A stretch of DNA of 64,000 bases, taken from positions 136,427,109 through 136,491,108 of the forward strand of contig NC_068983.1 in NCBI RefSeq assembly GCF_001194135.2. Direction: 5' to 3'. This document shows, piece by piece, positions 11,515 to 64,000 of this stretch. Origin of the DNA: Octopus bimaculoides. Taxonomy: Eukaryota. Below the pieces are notes generated by a model. It was not told the origin of the DNA. It saw only the letters and a program-made list of their open reading frames with translations, and did not search any database. How positions within the stretch are numbered: position 1 is the first letter of the stretch; each line of letters begins with the position of its first letter. A program made the translations under genes and the position numbers.

Positions 11515-12099
11515 GATAGATAGATAAGATCAGTTTGATTCAAATTTGTTGATACTCTTGAGTTTCAAGCATGATGCTAGTCATCAGCCATTTTGAATTT
11601 GGATGACAGAAGTTGATTGTTATTGTCGTAAGGTGAGCTGCAATTGGTCGAGGAAGGTCACACAGTGTTGCGGTTTGATGTTGGTCTATGGGTAACAGTT
11701 AGTTGGAAAATACTGCATGGTGAACAGGAAAGGGACCACGTGGAGATCAGGGAATAGAGTGCATGGCAATTAGAAATCAGTCAGATTGTTGGGGGCAGAA
11801 GTAGGAAGGGGCAGCATGTGCAAGTATATAGTTCTATATGTAGGTGTGTAGACACGCTCATATAGTTTTGCATGCATGTGTATATTGGTATGAGCGTGCA
11901 CATCTGTGCGTGAGTATGCACGCATATGCACATGAATGCACACACATACACACATGTGTATTCATTCATATGTAAACTCATGCATACCAGTGTGCATGCG
12001 CATGAATACATGTACTTGCACATGTTTGTGTGCAAGTATGCACCTGCAAAACAAGCGTTGAGAATTGGTAAGCACTGGGGATTGGTATGTACTGGGGAT

Positions 12100-28430: not shown

Positions 28431-29383
28431 CGTGTGTGTGTGTGTGTGTGTGTGTGTGTCTGTGAGACAGAGAGCAACACATATATTGACATCCCTCAGC
28501 TACACTAAGTGAAATAGTGATATGTTTACCTACTTAAAAAAAGCATATCCCTGTTGAACCCATGCCAGCATGGAAAAATGGACGCTAAACAAACAAATGA
28601 TACACATATATATATATGCAAGAGAGATGATTGCGCTGGTATGGACATGTAGCAAGAATGGATGAGGATAGCTGTGTGGAAAAGTGCCATTTGTCTATAT
28701 CTTTGCTTATAGTTCCCGATGCACCAATTATTATAGGCACAGCCTTTACAGTTTTCATACTCCAAATTCTTCCTGTTTCAAATTATCATCATCATCATCA
28801 TCACTATTATTTTACTTCTCAGAGCTCTTGGTCACACTTGCTCTGGTTGATTCTGTGAGAGTCGACAGCAACCTGTTATCAGAGGTCTCACAGGGTCTCT
28901 TTCTGCAAATTATAAGCTTTGGTACTTGGATTTTAACTTATTGTGGAAGACACTCAACACTCTGGTTCAGATGATTATTGTAAAAGCTTCCACCATAATG
29001 CTTCAAAAGATACTAGTCTATTAGTGAGAAAGGTAAATTTAAAAGTTGATTCCTATTTATTGTCTGTAATTGATATTTGTCACAGTCAGATATCAGTTAA
29101 AGTTGTCAAAATAGTTTCCCCCCTGTATGCAGAACAGTAGTTTGTTAGCAGAGACAGTTGCACAGTAGACTAAAGTTTTCTCCTCTCCTTGTCTTATACT
29201 TGTGGATCCTATACATAGTTAGCGTAGTTGGAAATTGGCTTACCAAATGCTTTGTAGGTTACTATAATTGTAATTTTATCCTGTCACCTAGTTCTGCTAG
29301 TCAGTGGTTTTAGAATGTTGTTTCTTTGATGAACCCAATCATTGTGTTTGTATTGTGTCATAGTTGTTGCATTATGTCTTTCA

Positions 29384-30372
29384 TGGGCGACCAAGTTAGT
29401 AGTGGGGGTGGGTGCGCTGAAAGTGTAGCTGCTAGAATAAGAATAGCCTGGGCAAAGTTTAGAGAGCTCTTACCCCTGCTGGCGACAAAGGGACTCTCAC
29501 TCAGAGTAAAAGGCAGACTGTATGACGCATGCGTACGAACAACCATGCTACATGGCAGTGAAACATGGGCTGTAACTGCTGAGGACATACGTAAGCTCGC
29601 AAGGAATGAAGCCAGTATGCTCCGTTGGATGTGTAATGTCAATGTGAATACCCGTCAGAGTGTAAGTATCTTGAGAGAAAAGCTGAACATTAGAAGCATC
29701 AGNNNNNNNNNNNNNNNNNNNNNNNNNNNNNNNNNNNNNNNNNNNNNNNNNNNNNNNNNNNNNNNNNNNNNNNNNNNNNNNNNNNNNNNNNNNNNNNNNN
29801 NNNNNNNNNNNNNNNNNNNNNNNNNNNNNNNNNNNNNNNNNNNNNNNNNNNNNNNNNNNNNNNNNNNNNNNNNNNNNNNNNNNNNNNNNNNNNNNNNNNN
29901 NNNNNNNNNNNNNNNNNNNNNNNNNNNNNNNNNNNNNNNNNNNNNNNNNNNNNNNNNNNNNNNNNNNNNNNNNNNNNNNNNNNNNNNNNNNNNNNNNNNN
30001 NNNNNNNNNNNNNNNNNNNNNNNNNNNNNNNNNNNNNNNNNNNNNNNNNNNNNNNNNNNNNNNNNNNNNNNNNNNNNNNNNNNNNNNNNNNNNNNNNNNN
30101 NNNNNNNNNNNNNNNNNNNNNNNNNNNNGTGCGGGTGGCACATAAAAGACACCATTTCGAGCGTGGCCGTTTTCGTGCGGGTGACACGTAAAAGCACCCA
30201 CTACACTCTCTGAGTGGTTGGCGTTAGGAAGGGCATCCAGCTGTAGAAACTCTGCCAAATCAGACTGGAGCCTGGTGTTGCCATCCGGTTTCACCAGTCC
30301 TCAGTCAAATCGTCCAACCCATGCTAGCATGGAAAGCGGACGTTAAACGATGATGATGATGATGATGATGAT
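29384..30372 (+). mobile_element. Young RTE LINE 3' fragment (short-UTR subfamily) with a gap inside
   Basis: Open frame GDQVSSGGGCAESVAARIRIAWAKFRELLPLL...EKLNIRSI, intact CpGs, (GAT)n tail. Confidence 0.93.
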
Positions 30373-53921: not shown

Positions 53922-55142
53922 ATCATCATCATCATCATCATCATCATCGTTTAACGTCCGCTTTCCATGCTAGCATGGGTTGGACGATTTGACTGAGGAC
54001 TGGTGAAACCGGATGGCAACACCAGGCTCCAGTCTGATTTGGCAGAGTTTCTACAGCTGGATGCCCTTCCTAACGCCAACCACTCAGAGAGTGTAGTGGG
54101 TGCTTTTACGTGTCACCCGCACGAAAACGGCCACGCTCGAAATGGTGTCTTTTATNNNNNNNNNNNNNNNNNNNNNNNNNNNNNNNNNNNNNNNNNNNNN
54201 NNNNNNNNNNNNNNNNNNNNNNNNNNNNNNNNNNNNNNNNNNNNNNNNNNNNNNNNNNNNNNNNNNNNNNNNNNNNNNNNNNNNNNNNNNNNNNNNNNNN
54301 NNNNNNNNNNNNNNNNNNNNNNNNNNNNNNNNNNNNNNNNNNNNNNNNNNNNNNNNNNNNNNNNNNNNNNNNNNNNNNNNNNNNNNNNNNNNNNNNNNNN
54401 NNNNNNNNNNNNNNNNNNNNNNNNNNNNNNNNNNNNNNNNNNNNNNNNNNNNNNNNNNNNNNNNNNNNNNNNNNNNNNNNNNNNNNNNNNNNNNNNNNNN
54501 NNNNNNNNNNNNNNNNNNNNNNNNNNNNNNNNNNNNNNNNNNNNNNNNNNNNNNNNNNNNNNNNNNNNNNNNNNNNNNNNNNNNNNNNNNNNNNNNNNNN
54601 NNNNNNNNNNNNNNNNNNNNNNNNNNNNNNNNNNNNNNNNNNNNNNNNNNNNNNNNNNNNNNNNNNNNNNNNNNNNNNNNNNNNNNNNNNNNNNNNNNNN
54701 NNNNNNNNNNNNNNNNNNNNNNNNNNNNNNNNNNNNNNNNNNNNNNNNNNNNNNNNNNNNNNNNNNNNNNNNNNNNNNNNNNGCGTCATACAGTCTGCCT
54801 TTTACTCTGAGTGAGAGTCCCTTTGTCGCCAGCAGGGGTAAGAGCTCTCTAAACTTTGCCCAGGCTATTCTTATTCTAGCAGCTACACTTTCAGCGCACC
54901 CACCCCCACTACTAACTTGGTCGCCCAGATAGCGGAAGCTATCGACTACCTCTAGTTTTTCACCCTGGAATGAGATAGAAGTTGTTTCCTGTTTGTTTGC
55001 AGTCTTTATTGCACCTGAACATCTGCCACAAACAAAAACTAACTTGCTAGTTAACCTGCCTTTGATGTTGCTGCACCTCTTATGTGTCCATAGCTTGCAC
55101 CGGGTACATCTTATAGAGTTACTACCTACTCCTTTTCTACAT
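53922..55142 (-). mobile_element. Young RTE LINE 3' fragment (short-UTR subfamily) with a gap inside
   Basis: Open frame CRKGVGSNSIRCTRCKLWTHKRC...LRVKGRLYD and (GAT)n tail. The sequenced parts appear identical to 29384-30372. Confidence 0.93.
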
Positions 55143-55964
55143 AATGTTAAAATGTAATTAAAATGAATAAGAAATACAAGTTGAACATGCAGCAAGGATT
55201 CATGATGGAAATATAAACAAATCCTAGAGACAGTTTCATTGGTATCATTCTTATTTAATCTGACCCTTTTTGAATTACAAGGATACATATAGACAAGTAC
55301 TCAACTCAGGTTTTTGTAGTATTATGATGATATACACCTTCTCTTGATTGAACTCAGCATCTTCAATTCCACAAAACTATTATTATTTCTACTCTGAAAT
55401 ATATCAGTCAGTGGTGTCTATTACAGGTAGATGAATTGGAAGTTATATATTTTAGCCAAATACCATAGACTTTTGTGCTTCTTTACTCATAAGACTACAA
55501 GAGAATTAACATTATTAAACTACTCTGATTTATTATTAACCAGTGCTTACCTTTTGCAAATCTCAAGTAAGACACAGTGGATTCAAAGGTACTGCTGCTA
55601 CACACAAAAGTTTTGAAGACAATATGAGAGAAAAAGGTGGTCTGACTGGTTGGCAAAAACTCACTCAATAGAAGATTCAGTAGGCAATACATAAAATTAT
55701 TAGTGGTTTTTAGTTAAACCCCACTGCATTCTGAATTCAAATCCTACAATGGCTGATTTTGCCTTTGGTCATTTTTGAGGTTGATAAAATTAGTGGTAAA
55801 GCACTGGAATTAATTGTAATTATGTAAAACACAAATCAAGTTGTACTTTTCTGCTTTGCCTAAGTTAAAAATCTTTATTCATACTCTTACAAGTGCCAGA
55901 TTAAATGCTTTAAACTGTTTTGTTTTGTCACTATATTGAAATAATGCAAAGTTGATTTTGCCAT

Positions 55965-56031
<67 letters not shown>

Positions 56032-58679
56032 GTTGGATAAAGTAAATATCAAGTATGTACTGGAGTTGAAGTCAATCAAAAATATCTTTCCTTATAAATA
56101 TATATCAATGTAAGAAATCATGATTAGTTTTCTTAGATCAGCAAACCAAAGAATTGTTTTTTTAGATACATTCGTTCCAATTTCTAGCAATAACATTTGT
56201 TAATGCTCTCTAAACTTTCTTTTAGCATTGTTAAGTAAACAGGTTTTCTTGTTTCTAAATATTAGAAAATGTAAACTGTGCAAGTTAGAAGTATCAACAA
56301 TCTCAACAAGCAAATGTTGATCAATTAGTGATTCTAATTTCAATATTAACAAATATTAAATAATCAGATTTTGGCAAATTAATAGAAGTTATCATGCAAT
56401 ATTCATCAATAATTGATTATTCAGGATTGTATGCTTCTACTTTGAATGGAGGTGTACTAAATAGCCTAAATAAATAGTATTAAAGGAATAATTTGTTGTT
56501 TATAAAGGATCTAATTAATATCACCAATATATAATCAGTGTTACTTATACATGAGTGTACTATTTCTGTCAATTTTCTTGTTAATATGTTTATAGTTGAT
56601 AACCTAAAGGGTGGTGTGTAGGCACCCAGCAGATTGAAAATAAGACCTGGCAATGAGTAGAAGAGCATTTTAAAGAAAAGCCAATGGCCAACCATACCTA
56701 AAGACAAAATTGGCAGCATCAGATTATCTGCTTATTGAACAGCACATTGTTGTGCACTTACAGCATCCTTGATCTATAGATATTAGATGGATGCTATGTA
56801 TGAACATAGTATATTGTCCTTTAAAAGTATGACATATAATGTATATATAATGCTTAAGTTGATCTTATTAAACATTCAAAATACTCTGCGTCAATGTCCA
56901 TGATAAAATAGTAGTAGGTGCTATAGCTGTGTATCATTGTTCATTAACATTATCCTGGCAGCACATTAAACTGTTCTATTCTGATGTTCAGATATAAGCA
57001 ACATACATGATTTATTTATGCCTAATGCCTACTTAGTATGAGTACGCATGTGCGAATGTGTGCGTGTATGTATAAGCAAAATAGGCTATCCACTTAAGTG
57101 CTAGCCTAATTCATGACTGCTTTATATTGCAGCTGACCTAGGCCATTGACTGGGGAAGGAAGCCAGGTGCATCAACAGATCATGAAACAGTTTGCCCGAA
57201 GAACCCTCATTCTCTTTCTTTTATCCATATATCAACACCAAAGAAAAAAAATATTTTCATTCTTATTCCCACAGTGTAGCTTTTTAATATTTGAAATTAT
57301 TTTAAAGTTACAATGAATTAGGTATAAAATAGAGATATATTATACAGCATATGTAAATTAAGGCTACCCTACATGTATCTCTATTTGGTTTCAAAAAATT
57401 GTAGCTTAATGTGTAAGTGTATGATGTGCATATATAAGTATATACTTTCATACTTAGGTATATATTCATACATTCTTTGGCTAACCAGATTTTATGTACC
57501 TTCCTATTTCTCTGAGTTTCAAGTATAACAATGTCTTCTAACCTCTGACAGCACTTTTTGTGCCTCACAACACCTCCTCTTACTTTATCTCACTACCCAC
57601 TCTTACACCTCTAGGATACTGTCTAGCCTATCTTTCCATTATTGCACCCACTCAATGTTTTACCCCATCCCCCTCTCTCTCTCTCTTCATCCTTGTCACT
57701 GCCTTTTTATCTGTGACACTTTCAGGCATTCACATTCTGCTCTTTCTCTTCTTCCTACCTCTTGTGCCCTCTAGTATCTACTTCTTGACCTTCTCATTGA
57801 CTTCTTCACAGCTTTTCTTCCTCCTCAACACCCTTCTTTTTCCCTCTCTGACCTAACCACATGATCTTCCACCCTGCACATTCAATTCAATGACTCAAGA
57901 TTCTTCTCTCACCTTCTGTTCATACGCTTTACCATGTTGGATAAACCTAGAACTTTCCCTGCCTTACATAACCTATTCTATCATCTCTCAATTCCATCCC
58001 TCCTTTTTTCTCAATAATTCCTGTCACAAATTCCTTCTCCTCTGTTCCCTGACAAACTTCCTCATCCTCTCCTCTTATTATCCTTTGTCCCTTTGCCTAG
58101 AATCATCACTCACTCTCTCTTTTATTTTCTTTCATTTATAGAGGACATTTTAGGAGTTCAGCCCTGCAAATTAAGAGGCAATCACCACTAGTGCAGGTGT
58201 CACACAAAAAGTACACTACGTAAAGTGGTTAGCGTTAGGAAGAGCATCCAGCTATAGAAAAATAGACAGCCAAAGCAGTCAGTGTTGCATGACACAGTTC
58301 TCTGACTCATCAGACCCTGTTAAACCATCCAACCCATGTCAGCACAGAAACCAGATGTTAATGAATGATAATGACGATTTGCTGACCATCATTTATGTTA
58401 TGATTTCTTTTACCTATCCTTTCAGTCACTCTTACAAGTACCCAACCATGATTATTGGTAGTAATTCACACTACCTTTGTTTCCTTAGTGGATACAGTTC
58501 TTTGGATGATCTGCCATAAGACATAAATTTCAATTAGAGTTTTGGTAGTAGGCTTTAAGGTCCAAATAACTGAGCTTCAGAAGAAGGTATATACTCTGAT
58601 CTATATGTATTCTTGTAGTGCAAAAGAGTAATATTTGAATCATTTGCTTTCATTTGTAGTGCTTTCAAGATTCCAACAG

Positions 58680-58749: not shown

Positions 58750-60316
58750 TACACACCATTAGATCAGATATATGAGGGTGCGAAATTCTAAGTTCAAACT
58801 GCCAAGTGTTCAAGAATTCTTTAACCAGCTTGCATCTGAATTGCAACACATAATTTGTCACAATTTTCATTGAAATACCCAAGTCTTACAGGCTGGGATC
58901 GTTTATAATTGTTTAGCTTTTGTCTGTGACAAATTGCAATTTCAAAGAAATCCTCTGTTATAGTTCTCAAGAATGAGAAACTGAAAATTCTTGCACTGAA
59001 ACAAATCTACCCTGGTATTTGGCCTTGGCGTCTTTGATACTGGTTTGGTTCAAGTCCGTCATTTTGCTAGTTTCTTTGGTGCCTTAAAGCAGTATCACAT
59101 TTGCCAATCAGTCTAATGACATTAGCTGACATTTCAGGCCACTTACAGTAAATTTCATATTTAAGTCATTGTAAATAACCTAAATATGACTAGTTTTACC
59201 TAGTTAAGCATCAGCTGTCATTATCCACGGAATAACATTGTTGCTTGAACTTTGTCTCAGAACTCCTGGTATTGGCAATTTTCAGACCAATCTTGTTCCA
59301 GAACTTGAATTAAATTTAGCCCTTTGACTATCGGTTTTCAGTTCAGCAATTTTTGAATTGTCCCTCTGAAGTGTTTGCAACAAATCAGTTTTATAAAACA
59401 GATTGTCTGCCTCACAAATGAAAGCTTAGTTTGACTTTACTGTAGACAAACTAAGTGTGTTCATAATTTTTCATTCTTACCACTTTATGTATTTTAGAAA
59501 GCAATCTCAATTCCACAGTCATTTTCTGTAACCTCTGAGGAGCCTTGTAAAGGTGTTTGCTAAGCATGTTTATCATTACCTTATGATCTGTCTCAACTAA
59601 GAGTGACATACCATATACACACTTCTAAAAGTGCTCAGCACCAAAATCTACAGTTTCTTTTTCAAATGAACTCTTATTTGTGACTCAGTCAGAGTCAATG
59701 AGATGGATAACTAGATGGTCAGCTTATTTATAGATTTTCTTATATCCAGTGATGTTAGTACAGGCTTTTTTGTCAAAGTATCCTAATACTGGTGAACTGC
59801 TAACAGCAAGTTTTATACTGGCAAATGCTTTTTGTTCTACTTTAGTTCAATTCCATACATTTGGTCTCTCTGTAAGCTTTCTAAGGTTCACTCACCTCTG
59901 ACAATGAAGAATAAACTTGGCCAAGTTTATTACCATCGCTTAGTATATGTCTAGTGCACTGCATTCAGTAAATGCTTGTAATGTATGGATAGCAGAAATT
60001 TTATCTGAATCTGGTTTCATTTCTTTCTTCTTTGGTTAGTAGATATTCATTATATTTTACTTGGTCAACATAAAGCTTAGTTTTCCTTGAAATTATTTTT
60101 AGAGTTTTGCCTCTGTATTGTTTTGCAATGCCAACAAGTTGCCTGTACTACAAACACCTTCCAGACCCCCAGACAAATGCGTCATACCTACTTGGGATAC
60201 CTCAGGAATTGATCTCACTGCAAAAGAAGGTTTGTCACAAGCATACTTACCTGTTGAACTTTGTTTACTACTCTCTTTAGATAGCTTTATTTGTCAAGCA
60301 CATCTAACATTGAAAT
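58750..60316 (-). mobile_element. Old Ty3/Gypsy pol relic (RT, RNase H, integrase), 3' part
   Basis: Minus-strand fragments: QIKLSKESSK..IPEVSQ..GGLEGV; KPDSDKISAIH; LAKFI..LRKLTE..W..EQKAF..SSPVLGYFD; EKE..FGAEHF..LVETDHK..KAPQRLQKM; WPEMS..CD; VDLFQCKNFQFLIL; GISMKIVTN..QF...KEFLNTWQFE. Many stops and frameshifts. Confidence 0.85.
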
Positions 60317-60318
60317 TT

Positions 60319-60712
60319 TAGTAGAAAAGTGGGTTATACATCTTTAGACGTATACCTGACTTTCCTACTATAATATTAAGGAATATAACGGAACGCTGAA
60401 CTCCAGACTATCAACTTAAACAACATTTATTCAGGTGGTAAATATATACATCTTTAGTTCTTGTTGTTACAGCTTCTGTTGTTGGGACGTTGTCATGTAG
60501 GTGTGAGCGAGCTGTCGAGCGTAAGTCCGAAAGATGTAGAGAGACAGCTTAACACATAAAGAGGCCGTCTCCAGAGTTCGAATGTTAGAGACTCTCTTGA
60601 CACGTCCATTGCTCTATGCTGGCCAGCAAGAAAGAGAATGAATTGAGTGGGAACGCTTGGTTGTTTAATTTTACGCATGCGTGAGACTACACATGCGCAC
60701 GGCGTTACTACA
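60319..60712 (-). repeat. 3' LTR
   Basis: Direct repeat of 62207-62600, preceded on the minus strand by a polypurine-rich tract. Confidence 0.92.
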
Positions 60713-61986
60713 GGGCTCCCTTGCCAGTGCGGAAACGCACGATAAATGAAATCTGTTAGAACACCTGAGGCAGGATNNNNNNNNNNNNNNNNNNNNNNNN
60801 NNNNNNNNNNNNNNNNNNNNNNNNNNNNNNNNNNNNNNNNNNNNNNNNNNNNNNNNNNNNNNNNNNNNNNNNNNNNNNNNNNNNNNNNNNNNNNNNNNNN
60901 NNNNNNNNNNNNNNNNNNNNNNNNNNNNNNNNNNNNNNNNNNNNNNNNNNNNNNNNNNNNNNNNNNNNNNNNNNNNNNNNNNNNNNNNNNNNNNNNNNNN
61001 NNNNNNNNNNNNNNNNNNNNNNNNNNNNNNNNNNNNNNNNNNNNNNNNNNNNNNNNNNNNNNNNNNNNNNNNNNNNNNNNNNNNNNNNNNNNNNNNNNNN
61101 NNNNNNNNNNNNTAAAAGTGTCTGTAGAGACAAAAAAAATCCAATTCGTATAAAAGTTACACAAGTTAATTGGTGTGTCCCTGGTGGTGGGGTTGTTGGC
61201 GCACAACATTGTGGTAGACAGTACATTGATGTTCTGTATGTGTGGTGGTAATGATGTTGACAGTGGTAATGATCTGTTGAAACTTGGCGACGTCAGAGGG
61301 AATGCTTGTAGTTGGTAGTAGTAATTGTTGTCGTCACGGTGGTAATCTTGGTTGGCGCACAACGCTGGTGGCGAAAAGGCTGTTTGGTGATGAGTGTTTG
61401 AAGAGGTACGCTTTTACAGAACGATCGACAGACAAATCTCTGTACGACCATTAGCGAAAACCTCGAAGAAAAATTTTTTTAACCCAAGATGAAAAAACGA
61501 CCATGCAAACTCAAAAAGGAGAAATGGTGACGAATGGAATAACAGAGGACTCCTTTTATCTAAACGTGTCACATGGTCGAAACCAAAATATATATCAAAG
61601 ATGTTATACAAGTAATTACGTTATACTATGAACATTAGTGAATTCGTAAATACCAGTAATGAGACGATAGAAAAAAAAAACAACCGTATGAAATGAATAA
61701 CAAGAGNNNNNNNNNNGAATTCGTAAATACCAGTAATGAGACGATAGAAAAAAAAAACAACCGTATGAAATGAATAACAAGAGTTATTGTGTGGCATAAA
61801 ATATGTATGTATATGTGACAGTGTGAAATGCGACATATAAGAACATAATAAAAAGCAGGCCGTAATTCCTGTCTGTTTTTCGTGAGTGGAAAAATCCACT
61901 CTAACAGAGGCGAGAATAAAAACCGCTCTTGTTGAGTCGTGTTGACTATGGTTGGAGATGTTGGTAATATGTAGTTCGGTCTCCAT

Positions 61987-62203
61987 GGCTGTATTTGTTC
62001 TTTAGTCGGGTTCACCAGTTATAAGTTGGTAGTCCAGAATTCATGCTGCGTTTTTTCTTCGTCGGGGGTCACCACTTTAGTAGAAAGTGGGTTATTGCAG
62101 CTCAGCGGGCTGCGTGTTCGAATCACGTCGGGGTCACCAGTATAGTAGAAAATGGGTATTTGCATTCAGTGGGCTGCGTGTTCGAATCACGTCGGGGTCA
62201 CCA
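61987..62203 (+). repeat. Tandem array of four PBS units (3' half of mature tRNA-Trp including CCA) separated by U5-end-like spacers; not functional tRNA genes
   Basis: GGCTGCGTGTTCGAATCACGTCGGGGTCACCA at 62108-62139 and 62172-62203 (T-arm, acceptor strand, CCA). Decayed units end at 62074 and 62017. Confidence 0.9.
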
Positions 62204-62206
62204 CTT

Positions 62207-62600
62207 TAGTAGAAAAGTGGGTTATACATCTTTAGACGTATACCTGACTTTCCTACTATAATATTAAGGAATATAACGGAACGCTGAACTCCAGACTATC
62301 AACTTAAACAACATTTATTCAGGTGGTAAATATATACATCTTTAGTTCTTGTTGTTACAGCTTCTGTTGTTGGGACGTTGTCATGTAGGTGTGAGCGAGC
62401 TGTCGAGCGTAAATCCGAAAGATGTAGAGAGACAGCTTAACACGTAAAGAGGCTGTCTCCAGAGTTCGAATGTTAGAGACACTCTTGACACGTCCATTGC
62501 TCTATGCTGGCCAGCAAGAAAGAGAATGAATTGAGCGGGAACGCTTGGTTGTTTAATTCTACGCATGTGTGAGACTACGCATGCGCACGGCGTTACTACA
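62207..62600 (-). repeat. 5' LTR
   Basis: Direct repeat of 60319-60712, followed on the minus strand by the PBS. Confidence 0.92.
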
Positions 62601-62800
62601 AAATATTTAGCAGATTGTATTACAGTAATAACTTTAATGCTGAAGACTGTATTATATCTCAGTCCAAAATGTATGATTATTTTTGTGAGATTTGGGGGAT
62701 ATATTGGTGTTGGGTATTTGGTGGAATTTAATAAGAAAAAAATAACAAAATAGCTCATTAAGGATATTAACCTCTTATATAAAAAGTGAGTTAGAAGAGT
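62601..62800 (-). mobile_element. Old Gypsy pol relic, RT N-terminal part (continuation of 58750-60316)
   Basis: IYPPNLTKIIIHF...QSAKYF. Joining across the insertion restores SAKYF..*QIKL. Confidence 0.6.
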
Positions 62801-63131
62801 AATAGATTTGATGTAAAAGCTGTACTATTTAAAAAGCCGAGTTTGGTGTGTCATATTTCCAAAGTCCACTTGAATTCAACTACATTGTTCATCCTTTCTA
62901 GGTTGATAAAATAAGTGATATACAAGAATGAGTTCAGTTCCTTGTAAATTCTTCACAAAACTCATCCAGAAAGTGCCAGACAAAATACCTTTTACTCTAT
63001 AATTTCACCTGTTTTCAAAATTAACTTTGTTTTGTCATGCCTGATATAACATGATTGCTAGGAAAGTACTGGTTAATTCTTTTCAAAGTTTGATCTTGAA
63101 CTAAATTTAAAATTGCTACAATGAGAAATTA

Positions 63132-63570
63132 TTCATCATCGTCGTTTAATGTCCGCCTAGCATGGGTTGGACAAGTTGACTGAGGACTGGCGAACCAGAT
63201 GGCTGCACCAGGCTACAATCTGATCTGGCAGAGTTTCTAAAGTTGGATGCCCTTCCTAACGCCAACCACTCTGAGAGTGTAGTGGATGCTTTTATGTGCC
63301 ACCAGCACGAATGCCGGTCAGGCAGTACTGGCAATGGCCATGCTCAAAACGGTGCTTTTTACGTGCCACCTGCACAAGAGTCAGTCCAGCGGCACTGGCA
63401 ACGACCTCGCTCGAATGTTTTTTCACGTGCCACCAGCACAAGTGCCAGTAAGGCGACACTGTTAACGATCATGCTCAAATGGTGCTATTTACATGCCACT
63501 GGCACGGAACACAGACAACTGTTCTGGCAATGATCACGCTTGGTCGTGCCATTACGATTTCAATTTCATC
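63132..63570 (-). mobile_element. RTE 3' UTR fragment with tail
   Basis: Same terminal motif and UTR repeats as 19696-20200 and 40422-40880. Confidence 0.88.
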
Positions 63571-63599
63571 ATTATTATTATTTTATAGGTGATGAAGGC

Positions 63600-63790
63600 A
63601 ACACTCTGGCAGAATCATTAGAGCATTGGAAAATGCCTTGTGGTATTTCCTCAAAGTTTTTATATTCTGAGTTCAAATTGTGCCAGGGCTTTGATCTTTC
63701 TGGGGATCAATAAAATAAAGCACTAGTCTAGTACTGGAGTTTATGGTATTGACTAAACCTCTCCTCTCAAAGTTGCCTTGTGCAAATTTT
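63600..63790 (+). mobile_element. Degraded tRNA-derived SINE
   Basis: CTGGCAGAATCATTAG...TTCTGAGTTCAAATT...GGGGATCAATAAAATAAAG. Same family as 935-1075. Confidence 0.6.
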
Positions 63791-64000
63791 AGGGCTGGGT
63801 GTTTTAGGTCTTACTCACCTGTAAAATAATTGTTTTATAGGTGATGAAGAAAGGCAACCATGTATTACAGAATCTTTTTCAATAGATAATCATTTTGAGT
63901 TTGGAATCTTCCAGAGTTGATGTTGCATTTTTTTTTTCTTGTCATTGATAAAAGAAATTTTGGGTATTAATTCCATTGATTCTATACCCTGTGCCTCACA

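What the first reader, a model, noticed from the sequence alone, without database searches (positions are those of the whole stretch)
61987..62225. Polarised tandem array of tRNA-Trp 3'-half/U5-end units behind the 5' LTR of a non-autonomous Gypsy element
Seen: four PBS-like units instead of one, with a period of about 57-65 nt. The two LTR-proximal units (62172-62203, 62108-62139) are identical 32-nt copies of GGCTGCGTGTTCGAATCACGTCGGGGTCACCA. Units 3 and 4 (ending 62074 and 62017) are progressively decayed. The 27-33 nt spacers copy the LTR U5 end: one nearly exact (CTTTAGTAGAAAGTGGGTTAT) and one variant (GTATAGTAGAAAATGGGTATT). Units 1-2 also show TCAG two bases further upstream, in register with the tRNA anticodon stem. 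Established: this is the T-arm, acceptor strand and CCA of eukaryotic tRNA-Trp. CCA is added post-transcriptionally, so the copies derive from mature tRNA. A PBS is normally at most 18 nt because m1A58 stops plus-strand strong-stop synthesis, and read-through stops nearer the anticodon loop are known for HIV-1 RT. Inference: repeated read-through past m1A58 followed by aberrant second-strand transfer added one [U5 end + long tRNA copy] unit per event next to the LTR. This would give a chronological array whose spacers may record different family members or helper elements. Possible consequences: multi-site priming that lets a defective element compete for helper RT; a decoy for tRF-3 silencing; or, on the host-sense strand, tRNA-half-like hairpins inside the Cav1 pre-mRNA.
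Basis: partly seen in the sequence, partly recalled or inferred. Interest (0 to 1): 0.82.

Follow-up and report, generated by a model that had tools for sequence, protein, structure and literature searches.

The report
Tandem tRNA-Trp primer sites behind LTR
A retrotransposon sitting backwards in a calcium-channel intron carries, instead of one 18-base tRNA primer site, a row of about four units each made of the end of its own LTR plus a 32-38-base copy of mature tRNA-Trp; I found the same design in many termite Gypsy elements, so it looks like a recurrent, apparently undescribed scar of reverse-transcription errors.

Summary
Window 61987-62203 holds four tRNA-Trp 3'-part units ending in CCA, with unit ends 57, 65 and 64 nt apart. 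Units 62172-62203 and 62108-62139 are identical 32-mers. Two spacers copy the adjacent LTR end.

The array lies next to the 5' LTR of a minus-strand LTR element. Its LTRs are 60317-60712 and 62205-62600, 396 bp each, 98% identical, with target-site duplication AAAT.

"Non-autonomous" and "Gypsy" are unproven. The interior holds a 336-N gap and a 10-N gap, and nothing visible codes for protein.

New evidence comes from a metagenome scan for a 24-nt or longer tRNA-Trp 3' end with CCA. It returned about 30 eukaryotic retroelement loci, mostly termite Ty3/Gypsy. In 13 of about 31 distinct loci there are arrays of two to eight units, most with spacers that copy the LTR end. Related copies differ in unit number.

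Best explanation: reverse transcriptase read past the normal stop in the primer tRNA, then a template switch copied the U5 end and the primer site again. The array predates this insertion, because the two best units differ far more than the two LTRs do. The tRNA parts are held constant while the spacers drift.

The claim of one event per unit in time order is not shown: units 1 and 2 share junction peculiarities. I could not reach other copies in the host genome or the host tRNA-Trp gene. I rate it a new variant of a known kind, of moderate to high interest.

The parts
60313..60316 (.). Target-site duplication AAAT (left copy)
   Evidence: Read; identical AAAT at 62601-62604.
60317..60712 (-). 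3' LTR of the element, 396 bp. On the element strand it starts TGTAGTAAC and ends CTACTAAA.
   Evidence: 97.98% identical over 396 nt to 62205-62600 (8 mismatches).
60713..60725 (-). Candidate polypurine tract next to the 3' LTR (element strand GGCAAGGGAGCCC)
   Evidence: Read. Only a short purine run (AAGGGAG); weak.
60777..61112 (.). Assembly gap of 336 N inside the element's internal region
   Evidence: It hides an unknown amount of internal sequence.
61113..61986 (-). Visible internal or leader region with no recognisable coding sequence. It contains a 10-N gap (61707-61716) flanked by exact 67-bp duplicates.
   Evidence: tblastn with gag, PR, RT and IN of related elements found nothing.
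61987..62017 (-). Unit 4, the innermost and most decayed tRNA-Trp-derived unit (+ strand GGCTGTATTTGTTCTTTAGTCGGGTTCACCA)
   Evidence: local score 22 against a null maximum of 20; 12/13 match to tRNA positions 64-76.
62018..62043 (-). Spacer between units 4 and 3, not demonstrably derived from the LTR
   Evidence: score 12 against a null mean of 11.6. Weak resemblance to termite U5 ends.
62044..62074 (-). Unit 3, a decayed tRNA-Trp unit. GCTGCGT and CGTCGGGGGTCACCA are kept, the T loop is scrambled and there is one extra G.
   Evidence: score 28.
62075..62101 (-). Spacer between units 3 and 2. Bases 62075-62095 copy the linker base plus the U5 end (21/22); a TTGCAG junction follows.
62102..62139 (-). 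Unit 2, a copy of tRNA-Trp positions 39-76 with CCA. The 32-nt core 62108-62139 is perfect; positions 43-44 read CG instead of AA.
62140..62165 (-). Spacer between units 2 and 1, a diverged copy of the U5 end (about 20/24) with the same TTGCA junction
62166..62203 (-). Unit 1, the LTR-proximal copy of tRNA-Trp positions 39-76 with CCA. The core 62172-62203 is perfect; positions 43-44 read TG. It is the presumed working primer-binding site.
62204..62204 (-). Single linker base between the primer site and the LTR end; it is also copied into the spacers
   Evidence: Read.
62205..62600 (-). 5' LTR of the element (396 bp)
62601..62604 (.). Target-site duplication AAAT (right copy)
   Evidence: Read.

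Best explanation
This is the junction between the 5' LTR and the leader of an LTR retrotransposon. The element is inserted antisense in an intron of an L-type calcium-channel gene.

Shown:
- The primer-binding region is a tandem array, not one 18-nt site.
- Each of the two best units consists of the last 21-27 nt of U5, one linker base, and the complement of the 3'-terminal 38 nt of mature tRNA-Trp (positions 39-76, CCA included).

Inferred origin:
- During plus-strand strong-stop synthesis the reverse transcriptase did not stop at m1A58. It copied on into the T arm, the variable loop and the anticodon stem of the primer tRNA.
- The resulting 3' tail cannot pair with the minus strand. It was rescued by a template switch with little or no homology.
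- The switch went to a minus-strand 3' end lying a few tens of bases inside U5. That end could be an abortive tRNA-primed minus-strand product or an overshooting minus strand.
- Copying from there re-made the U5 end and a fresh primer site, which restored a pairable 3' end.
- Each such event places a new [long tRNA copy + U5 end] unit next to the LTR.
- Units can also multiply or be lost when the plus strand anneals to the wrong repeat.

Shown about age: the array was already in the RNA genome when this copy inserted.

Inferred maintenance: the tRNA-complementary parts stay identical to the tRNA for one of two reasons. The site in use is re-copied from the primer at every cycle, or the units are selected as tRNA-binding sites. 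The U5-derived spacers drift freely.
For: 1. The units end in CCA and match tRNA-Trp(CCA) positions 39-76. No whole tRNA is present.

2. LTR pair, target-site duplication and position define the site as the primer-site junction.

3. All 9 gapped-alignment differences between units 1 and 2 (family D6; hand check) fall in the non-tRNA half (p = 0.001). They far exceed the roughly 1.3 differences expected at the 2% LTR divergence (P = 9e-6). So the duplication is older than the insertion and the tRNA part is constrained or refreshed.

4. The design recurs.
- A scan for a 24-nt or longer tRNA-Trp 3' end with CCA gave about 30 eukaryotic retroelement loci.
- Arrays of two or more tRNA-derived units occur in 13 of about 31 distinct loci. 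In most, the spacers equal the adjacent LTR end and the innermost unit is a normal 13-15-nt primer site.
- One such element has PR-RT-RNaseH-IN, the Ty3/Gypsy order.
- Two more long copies turned up in contaminated MAG contigs.

5. Other footprints lack U5. L015, L026 and L031 read LTR-[76>40]-[68>40]-[68>59]-leader. L012 and L036 read LTR-[76>47]-[68>61]-leader. These are hard to explain except by copying the tRNA and restarting inside the primer site.

6. Related copies differ in unit number: L015 against L026 and L031; L025 against L008 and L035.

7. tRNA copy endpoints cluster at 27-28, 38-42 and 45-49. These lie just 3' of m2,2G26, m1G37 and m7G46/D47 as known from textbook tRNA-Trp; the modifications were not tested here.

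8. The tRNA-perfect unit is the LTR-proximal one in 6 of 8 arrays (P = 0.055).

9. Precedents:
- m1A58 and m5Um54 act as stops, and read-through products cannot complete plus-strand transfer (PMC8599865).
- Primer-site and tRNA inserts occur at 2-LTR circle junctions (PMC5618025).
- Long reverse-transcribed tRNA inserts occur in MMLV and HIV-1 (PMC252783 and PMC1456326, cited in PMC12220202).
Against: - Units 1 and 2 share junction states (TTGCA; YG at tRNA positions 43-44) that are absent from the present LTR and from all other tRNA-Trp copies seen. At least the last step may therefore be a plain duplication of an existing unit, not a fresh capture.
- The younger spacer by position is the more diverged one.
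- A58 is copied correctly in every unit, whereas passing m1A58 usually leaves a mismatch. This implies hypomodified primers or later correction.
- The microhomology at the proposed switch is only 2-3 nt.
- The host tRNA-Trp sequence is unknown. C47, G57 and positions 43-44 are unverified.
- No other copy of this LTR family could be examined.
- All termite examples may belong to one broad clade.
- The scan required 24 nt or more, so how common the feature is cannot be judged.
Confidence: 0.7

Rival explanations
1. Plain DNA-level tandem duplication. Replication slippage or unequal exchange, in a master copy, duplicated a segment spanning the LTR end and an already long primer site. Reverse transcription had no role in making the repeats.
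For: - TRF sees an ordinary period-64 array.
- Units 1 and 2 share the same junction and the same two non-tRNA bases. The three distal units of L025 share an extra G. Both show that whole units do get copied from one another.
Against: - It does not explain how more than 18 nt of mature tRNA with CCA got there.
- It does not explain why, in many unrelated families, the repeats consist of tRNA plus U5 sequence only and always straddle this one junction.
- It does not explain the footprints without U5 that restart at tRNA position 68 in two unrelated families.
- It does not explain why the tRNA halves stay identical while the spacers diverge (p = 0.001).
- Duplication in place after insertion is excluded (P = 9e-6).
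Confidence: 0.17
2. A selected multi-site primer region. This concerns function and does not exclude the origin model. The array persists because several tRNA-Trp binding sites, with 32-38-nt pairing, improve primer capture or give back-up priming.
For: - The tRNA parts of units 1 and 2 are 32/32 identical beside 28% diverged spacers.
- L007 has three perfect 24-mers beside differing spacers.
- The array survived at least one round of retrotransposition.
- Arrays are common in termite families.
Against: - Re-copying of the used site from the primer explains the conservation without selection.
- Distal units decay (units 3 and 4; L020, L031).
- Direct repeats are deletion-prone during reverse transcription (established knowledge of retroviral recombination).
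- There is no functional data.
Confidence: 0.25
3. Assembly artefact. A single primer site was expanded by mis-assembly of short reads.
For: The scaffold is gap-rich. About 270 bp away, a 10-N gap is flanked by exact 67-bp duplicates, a clear assembly error.
Against: - The units differ at many spacer positions, and the identical stretches are only 32 nt, so reads can place them.
- The array lies in uninterrupted sequence from 61717 to 64000.
- Equivalent termite arrays were assembled independently and identically in two metagenomes each: L007/L027, L006/L017, L004/L030 and L008/L029.
Confidence: 0.03
4. A cluster of tRNA pseudogenes or a tRNA-derived SINE, unrelated to the LTR element.
For: The units contain a T arm (B-box-like) in tRNA sense on the + strand.
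Against: - There is no 5' half, no A box and no cloverleaf (ARAGORN found 0 genes).
- CCA is present in each unit.
- The spacers are copies of the LTR end.
- The array abuts an LTR with a target-site duplication.
Confidence: 0.01

Closest known systems
Canonical retroviral and LTR-retrotransposon primer-binding site for tRNA-Trp (Rous sarcoma / avian leukosis virus type; Rfam RF00467)
   Same: The 18 nt next to the LTR (element strand TGGTGACCCCGACGTGAT) are identical to the RSV primer-site consensus. The position, one linker base after U5, is canonical.
   Different: Complementarity continues without a break to 32-38 nt. The site is present about four times, interleaved with copies of the U5 end.
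Aberrant reverse-transcription products that carry tRNA sequence. Examples: primer-site and tRNA inserts at 2-LTR circle junctions; a reverse-transcribed tRNA between MMLV LTRs (Colicelli and Goff 1986); hairpin-induced tRNA-mediated recombination in HIV-1.
   Same: Reverse transcriptase copies far more than 18 nt of a tRNA and joins it to viral sequence by non-homologous switching (PMC5618025; PMC12220202).
   Different: Those are rare products in dead-end circles or laboratory variants. Here the product is inherited in the germline, sits at the functional primer site, is iterated in tandem and recurs across families.
m1A58 and m5Um54 stops in plus-strand strong-stop synthesis (HIV-1 with tRNA-Lys3)
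   Same: This explains why a primer site is normally 18 nt, and why read-through beyond position 54 gives a tail that cannot complete plus-strand transfer (PMC8599865).
   Different: In HIV-1 such products are reported as non-integrating dead ends. Here they appear to have been rescued and fixed.
Bipartite or extended tRNA contacts of Ty3, Drosophila Gypsy and Ty1
   Same: The element RNA pairs with tRNA regions beyond the 3' end, including the T arm (PMC1635307).
   Different: Those contacts are separate short boxes, some at the 3' end of the genome. They are not continuous copies of the tRNA, and they are not tandem units with U5 spacers.
Helenus and Cassandra TRIMs (small-RNA-like sequence inside LTRs)
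   Same: These are small non-autonomous LTR elements that carry tRNA- or 5S-derived sequence. Animal Helenus makes 4-bp target-site duplications, and some use tRNA-Trp primer sites (PMC10886601).
   Different: There the tRNA-like part is a gene-like, promoter-bearing sequence inside the LTR. Here it is the 3' part of mature tRNA with CCA, outside the LTR at the primer site.

Membership tests
LTR retrotransposon (structural definition) | Two long terminal direct repeats | tested here: met
   60317-60712 and 62205-62600, 396 bp, 97.98% identical.
LTR retrotransposon (structural definition) | Target-site duplication flanking the element | tested here: met
   AAAT at 60313-60316 and at 62601-62604.
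LTR retrotransposon (structural definition) | TG...CA termini and short inverted ends | tested here: inconclusive
   The element strand starts TGTAGTA and ends TACTAAA. The ends are inverted with one mismatch; it ends AA, not CA.
LTR retrotransposon (structural definition) | Primer-binding site complementary to a tRNA 3' end directly after the 5' LTR | tested here: met
   Complement of tRNA-Trp positions 39-76, one base after the LTR.
LTR retrotransposon (structural definition) | Polypurine tract before the 3' LTR | tested here: inconclusive
   Only GGCAAGGGAGCCC, a short purine run.
Ty3/Gypsy (Metaviridae) | pol with the order PR-RT-RNaseH-IN and Gypsy-type RT and IN domains | not testable with these tools
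   No coding sequence is visible in the internal region. A 336-N gap lies inside it, and tblastn with Gypsy gag and pol was negative. The analogous termite element L004 does meet this feature.
Non-autonomous LTR element (TRIM or LARD) | Complete internal region without gag or pol | tested here: inconclusive
   About 1.1 kb of visible interior is non-coding. Two gaps of uncertain true size interrupt it.
tRNA gene, pseudogene or tRNA-derived SINE | Cloverleaf or 5' half with an A box | tested here: not met
   ARAGORN found no tRNA in the window. The units start at tRNA position 39 and end in CCA.
Product of primer-tRNA read-through by reverse transcriptase | Copy of mature tRNA (with CCA) continuous with the primer site and extending beyond position 58 | tested here: met
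   32 nt are perfect and 38 nt are in register in units 1 and 2. The range is 24-50 nt in 30+ other loci.
Product of primer-tRNA read-through by reverse transcriptase | Sequence identical to the host's own tRNA-Trp isodecoder | not testable with these tools
The unit differs at positions 47 (C) and 57 (G) from the L022 and human genes. G57 is seen in other retroelement copies; C47 is seen only here.
Product of primer-tRNA read-through by reverse transcriptase | Unit number and junctions vary among copies of one family | not testable with these tools
   There is no other copy of this LTR in the window, and none could be fetched. This feature is met in termite families: L015 against L026/L031, and L025 against L008/L035.

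The most novel reading that the evidence does not exclude
Tandem [U5 end + long tRNA copy] arrays may be a recurrent, heritable design of tRNA-Trp-primed Ty3/Gypsy-like elements in at least two animal phyla. On this reading they are made when a read-through plus-strand strong-stop DNA is rescued by end-to-end template switching onto short tRNA-primed minus-strand products. The arrays would then be natural records of where reverse transcriptase stopped on the modified primer (m1A58, m1G37, m2,2G26) and of how long abortive minus strands were. The extra units may also serve as working or back-up primer sites.
Probability: 0.3. Interest if true: 0.8.

Novelty: new variant of a known kind. Interest (0 to 1): 0.62.

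Why it matters
The step in which plus-strand strong-stop DNA stops on the primer tRNA and transfers has been studied almost only in vitro, for a few retroviruses and for Ty elements. Read-through products are regarded as dead ends.

These arrays suggest that such products are sometimes rescued, inherited and even propagated. They leave sequence footprints that can be read in any genome: the endpoint on the tRNA, the length of the U5 piece and the restart point.

That offers a comparative way to ask three questions:
- which tRNA modifications stop which reverse transcriptases in vivo;
- how primer-site switching and leader repeats arise;
- whether several primer sites help or harm an element, including its exposure to 3'-tRNA-fragment silencing.

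In practice, LTR annotation tools that expect one 18-nt primer site will mis-handle such elements.

Tried and rejected
- I translated an open frame inside the LTR and searched the protein collection, hoping that spurious gene calls would lead to other LTR copies. Nothing was found.
- Exact look-ups of the ORF across the array and of a nearby RT ORF found no record.
- The viral contig scan for the 24-mer gave 0 hits.
- The scan of bacterial and archaeal genomes gave only two contaminant eukaryotic contigs, each with a single long unit.
- Rfam gave no tRNA hit, only a sub-threshold RSV_PBS match that is useful for the 18-nt identity.
- BLAST of the LTR and interior found no other copy in the window and no LTR homology to the termite loci.
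- A generic search for other repeats ending in CCA, which would indicate other tRNAs, found none in the fetched loci.
- Nine literature searches found no description of tandem U5-end/tRNA arrays. They also found no published tRNA-Trp with GGCTGCGTGTTCGAATC. This is absence in the searchable open-access set only.
- Rejected: in-place duplication after insertion, a tRNA gene or SINE, and bacterial tRNA look-alikes among the hits (L003, L009, L016, L028).
- I ran no further search on gag or pol of the termite elements. The chance of landing on this window's family was small.

Full report
**What is there**

On the + strand, window 61987-62203 reads as four units that end in ...GGGGTCACCA or a decayed version of it. 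The ends lie at 62017, 62074, 62139 and 62203.

- Units 62172-62203 and 62108-62139 are the identical 32-mer GGCTGCGTGTTCGAATCACGTCGGGGTCACCA. Its 24-nt core occurs exactly twice in the 64 kb, against 0 expected.
- Tandem Repeats Finder reports a period-64 array at 62060-62225.
- Both perfect units have TCAG two bases upstream.
- Units 3 and 4 are significantly related to the 32-mer but decayed: scores 28 and 22 against a null maximum of 20 in 5000 background windows.
- Spacer 62075-62095 copies the sequence that follows unit 1, the LTR end, at 21/22. Spacer 62140-62165 copies it at about 20/24. The third spacer is not demonstrably related.

**Identity of the units**

- The 18 terminal bases equal the consensus of the Rous sarcoma virus primer-binding site in Rfam. 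The hit itself is below threshold. RSV uses tRNA-Trp, which is established knowledge.
- An ARAGORN-called eukaryotic tRNA-Trp(CCA) gene in locus L022 matches the 32-mer at 30/32 positions. A published human tRNA-Trp matches at the same positions (10.1101/400127). The differences are T47>C and A57>G.
- In standard numbering the 32-mer is positions 45-76 and TCAG is 39-42. Positions 43-44 read TG or CG instead of AA.
- ARAGORN finds no tRNA in the window. These are 3' parts of mature, CCA-bearing tRNA, not genes.

**Context**

- Direct repeats 60317-60712 and 62205-62600 are 396-bp LTRs with 8 mismatches, 97.98% identity.
- They are flanked by AAAT on both sides, and on the minus strand they read TGTAGTA...TACTAAA.
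- The element is therefore on the minus strand. Unit 1 is its primer-binding site, one linker base after U5.
- An exon at about 16.6-16.9 kb on the + strand encodes the N-terminus of an L-type calcium-channel alpha-1 subunit.
- The interior contains a 336-N gap, and a 10-N gap flanked by exact 67-bp duplicates. The visible 1.1 kb has no coding potential.
- 'Non-autonomous' and 'Gypsy' therefore cannot be decided from this window.

**Internal evidence on history**

- In a gapped alignment (family D6; hand check), units 1 and 2 differ at 9 positions, all in the 32-nt non-tRNA half (p = 0.001).
- At the 2% divergence of the LTRs, only about 1.3 differences would be expected in 64 nt (P = 9e-6).
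- Hence the duplication long predates this insertion. The array was carried through retrotransposition, and the tRNA parts are held constant while the spacers drift.
- Units 1 and 2 share the junction TTGCA..TCAG-YG-GGCT. The present LTR has TACA at that place, and every other tRNA-Trp copy I saw has AA at positions 43-44. These two units may therefore be copies of each other rather than separate captures.
- The spacer nearer the LTR is the more diverged one. This contradicts a simple chronology in which the newest unit lies next to the LTR.

**Comparative evidence (new)**

A scan of metagenome contigs for GTTCRAATCACGTCGGGGTCACCA returned 40 loci.

- Four are bacterial tRNA genes and one is the tRNA-Trp gene L022.
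- The rest are eukaryotic. Most come from termite-gut metagenomes and are presumably host DNA. In these the tRNA-Trp 3' part with CCA abuts an LTR-like end.
- L004 encodes PR, RT, RNase H and IN in the Ty3/Gypsy order, with an LTR pair 4.8 kb apart.

Thirteen of about 31 distinct loci carry two or more tRNA-derived units. L034 has eight.

- In L004, L006, L007, L008, L020, L023, L025, L035, L037 and L038 the spacers are 12-19-nt copies of the adjacent LTR end.
- In several of these arrays (L004, L008, L023, L025, L035, L038) the innermost unit is a normal 13-15-nt primer site.
- L007 has three perfect 24-mers separated by differing spacers.
- Four arrays were recovered identically in two independent assemblies.

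Across loci the tRNA copy begins at these positions:

| tRNA start position | Loci |
|---|---|
| 27-28 | L002, L021, L005 |
| 32 | L040 (unit 6 nt from the contig start) |
| 38-42 | 13 loci, including the window and L041 |
| 45-49 | 9 loci |
| 52-53 | one related group, at the scan's length threshold |

Two unrelated families show a different footprint without U5. L015, L026 and L031 read LTR-[76>40]-[68>40]-[68>59]-leader. L012 and L036 read LTR-[76>47]-[68>61]-leader. Among related copies there are one or two repeats. The tRNA-perfect unit is the LTR-proximal one in 6 of 8 arrays (P = 0.055).

**Mechanism**

*Established:*
- Plus-strand strong-stop DNA copies the primer tRNA up to m1A58.
- Without that stop the product runs on and cannot complete plus-strand transfer (PMC8599865).
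- The plus-strand copy of the primer site is templated by the tRNA in every cycle.
- Reverse transcriptases switch templates with little homology.
- Long tRNA inserts and primer-site inserts occur in aberrant retroviral DNA.

*Inferred:*
- A read-through plus strand stalled near the next blocking modification.
- It switched to a minus-strand 3' end. In the U5-bearing arrays this end lay 13-27 nt inside U5. It could be an abortive tRNA-primed minus strand or an overshoot. In the L015 and L012 type it lay inside the primer site, at position 68.
- Copying from there regenerated a pairable primer-site end.
- In the window the switch would join tRNA position 39 to about U5 position -27, where only GA(T) is shared.
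- Later growth or shrinkage can occur when the plus strand anneals to the wrong unit.
- The data do not decide how many units arose by fresh capture and how many by duplication.

**Rivals**

- Pure DNA slippage explains the copying of whole units. It does not explain the presence of more than 18 nt of mature tRNA, the restriction of repeats to tRNA plus U5 sequence at this one junction in many families, the footprints that restart at position 68, or the selective constancy of the tRNA halves.
- An assembly artefact is unlikely. The spacers are distinct, the identical stretches are only 32 nt, and the sequence is uninterrupted. It was not independently checked.
- A selected multi-site primer function is possible but untested. 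It does not exclude the origin model.

**Novelty**

The ingredients are known: the primer site, read-through and template switching. I found no description of germline, tandem [U5 end + long tRNA copy] arrays in nine full-text searches. Much of the older virology literature is outside that set, so absence there proves little. I rate it a new variant of a known kind.

**Limits**

- No other copy of this LTR family, and no host tRNA-Trp gene, could be reached.

Noticed in passing
window 61640-61783: A 10-N gap (61707-61716) is flanked by exact 67-bp copies (61640-61706 = 61717-61783). This is an unmerged contig overlap, so the true sequence probably has one copy and no gap.
   Followed up: partly
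window 60777-61112: A 336-N gap lies inside the retrotransposon. The element's real length and coding capacity are unknown.
   Followed up: partly
window 63140-63560; also 58224-58260, about 29548-30294 and about 54003-54155: An abundant SINE-like repeat with internal 62-67-nt tandem units (63289-63481). Copies occur in both orientations, and several abut assembly gaps.
   Followed up: no
window 11781-12617(-), 22659-23033(+), 29326-29700(+), 54783-55288(-): Fragments of LINE-type reverse-transcriptase ORFs, several of them interrupted by N gaps.
   Followed up: no
window 16345-16941(+): This ORF contains an exon for the N-terminal part of an L-type calcium-channel alpha-1 subunit. It matches Cav1.2 and Cav1.3 structures at E of 1e-8 to 1e-9.
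   Followed up: yes
L034 805-1632: A satellite-like array of eight 113-nt units, each ending in a 15-nt tRNA-Trp primer site preceded by about 98 nt of LTR-side sequence. Only the first unit has a longer tRNA copy (from position 49).
   Followed up: partly
L015 1241-1276, L026 5940-6010, L031 1590-1656, L012 4680-4724, L036 4280-4324 (coordinates in tRNA-sense orientation): Tandem or partial re-copies of tRNA-Trp positions 40-68 or 47-68, without CCA or U5. In two unrelated termite families they restart at position 68. Among related copies there are one or two repeats.
   Followed up: partly
window 62018-62043 and 62204-62235; L013 and L032 LTR ends: The window's U5 end (CTTTAGTAGAAAAGTGGGTTAT) resembles the U5 end of L013 and L032 (CTTTAGTGAACTGGGTAAT, p about 0.006). 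The innermost spacer weakly resembles termite U5 ends (TTATAAGT..., p about 0.01, uncorrected). This may reflect clade-level conservation of LTR termini, or chance.
   Followed up: partly
window unit 3 (62060-62074); L025, L035, L038, L008 distal units: Distal units in the window and in several termite arrays carry the same extra G (CGTCGGGGGTCACCA, five Gs instead of four). This is either recurrent slippage in the G run or a shared property of older primer sites.
   Followed up: no
L041 (contig CBDDTI010000523.1) and L042 (JBOFYY010000045.1): Two contigs filed under bacterial MAGs carry eukaryotic retroelement junctions with 39-nt and 32-nt tRNA-Trp copies. They are probably host contamination of the MAGs.
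   Followed up: no
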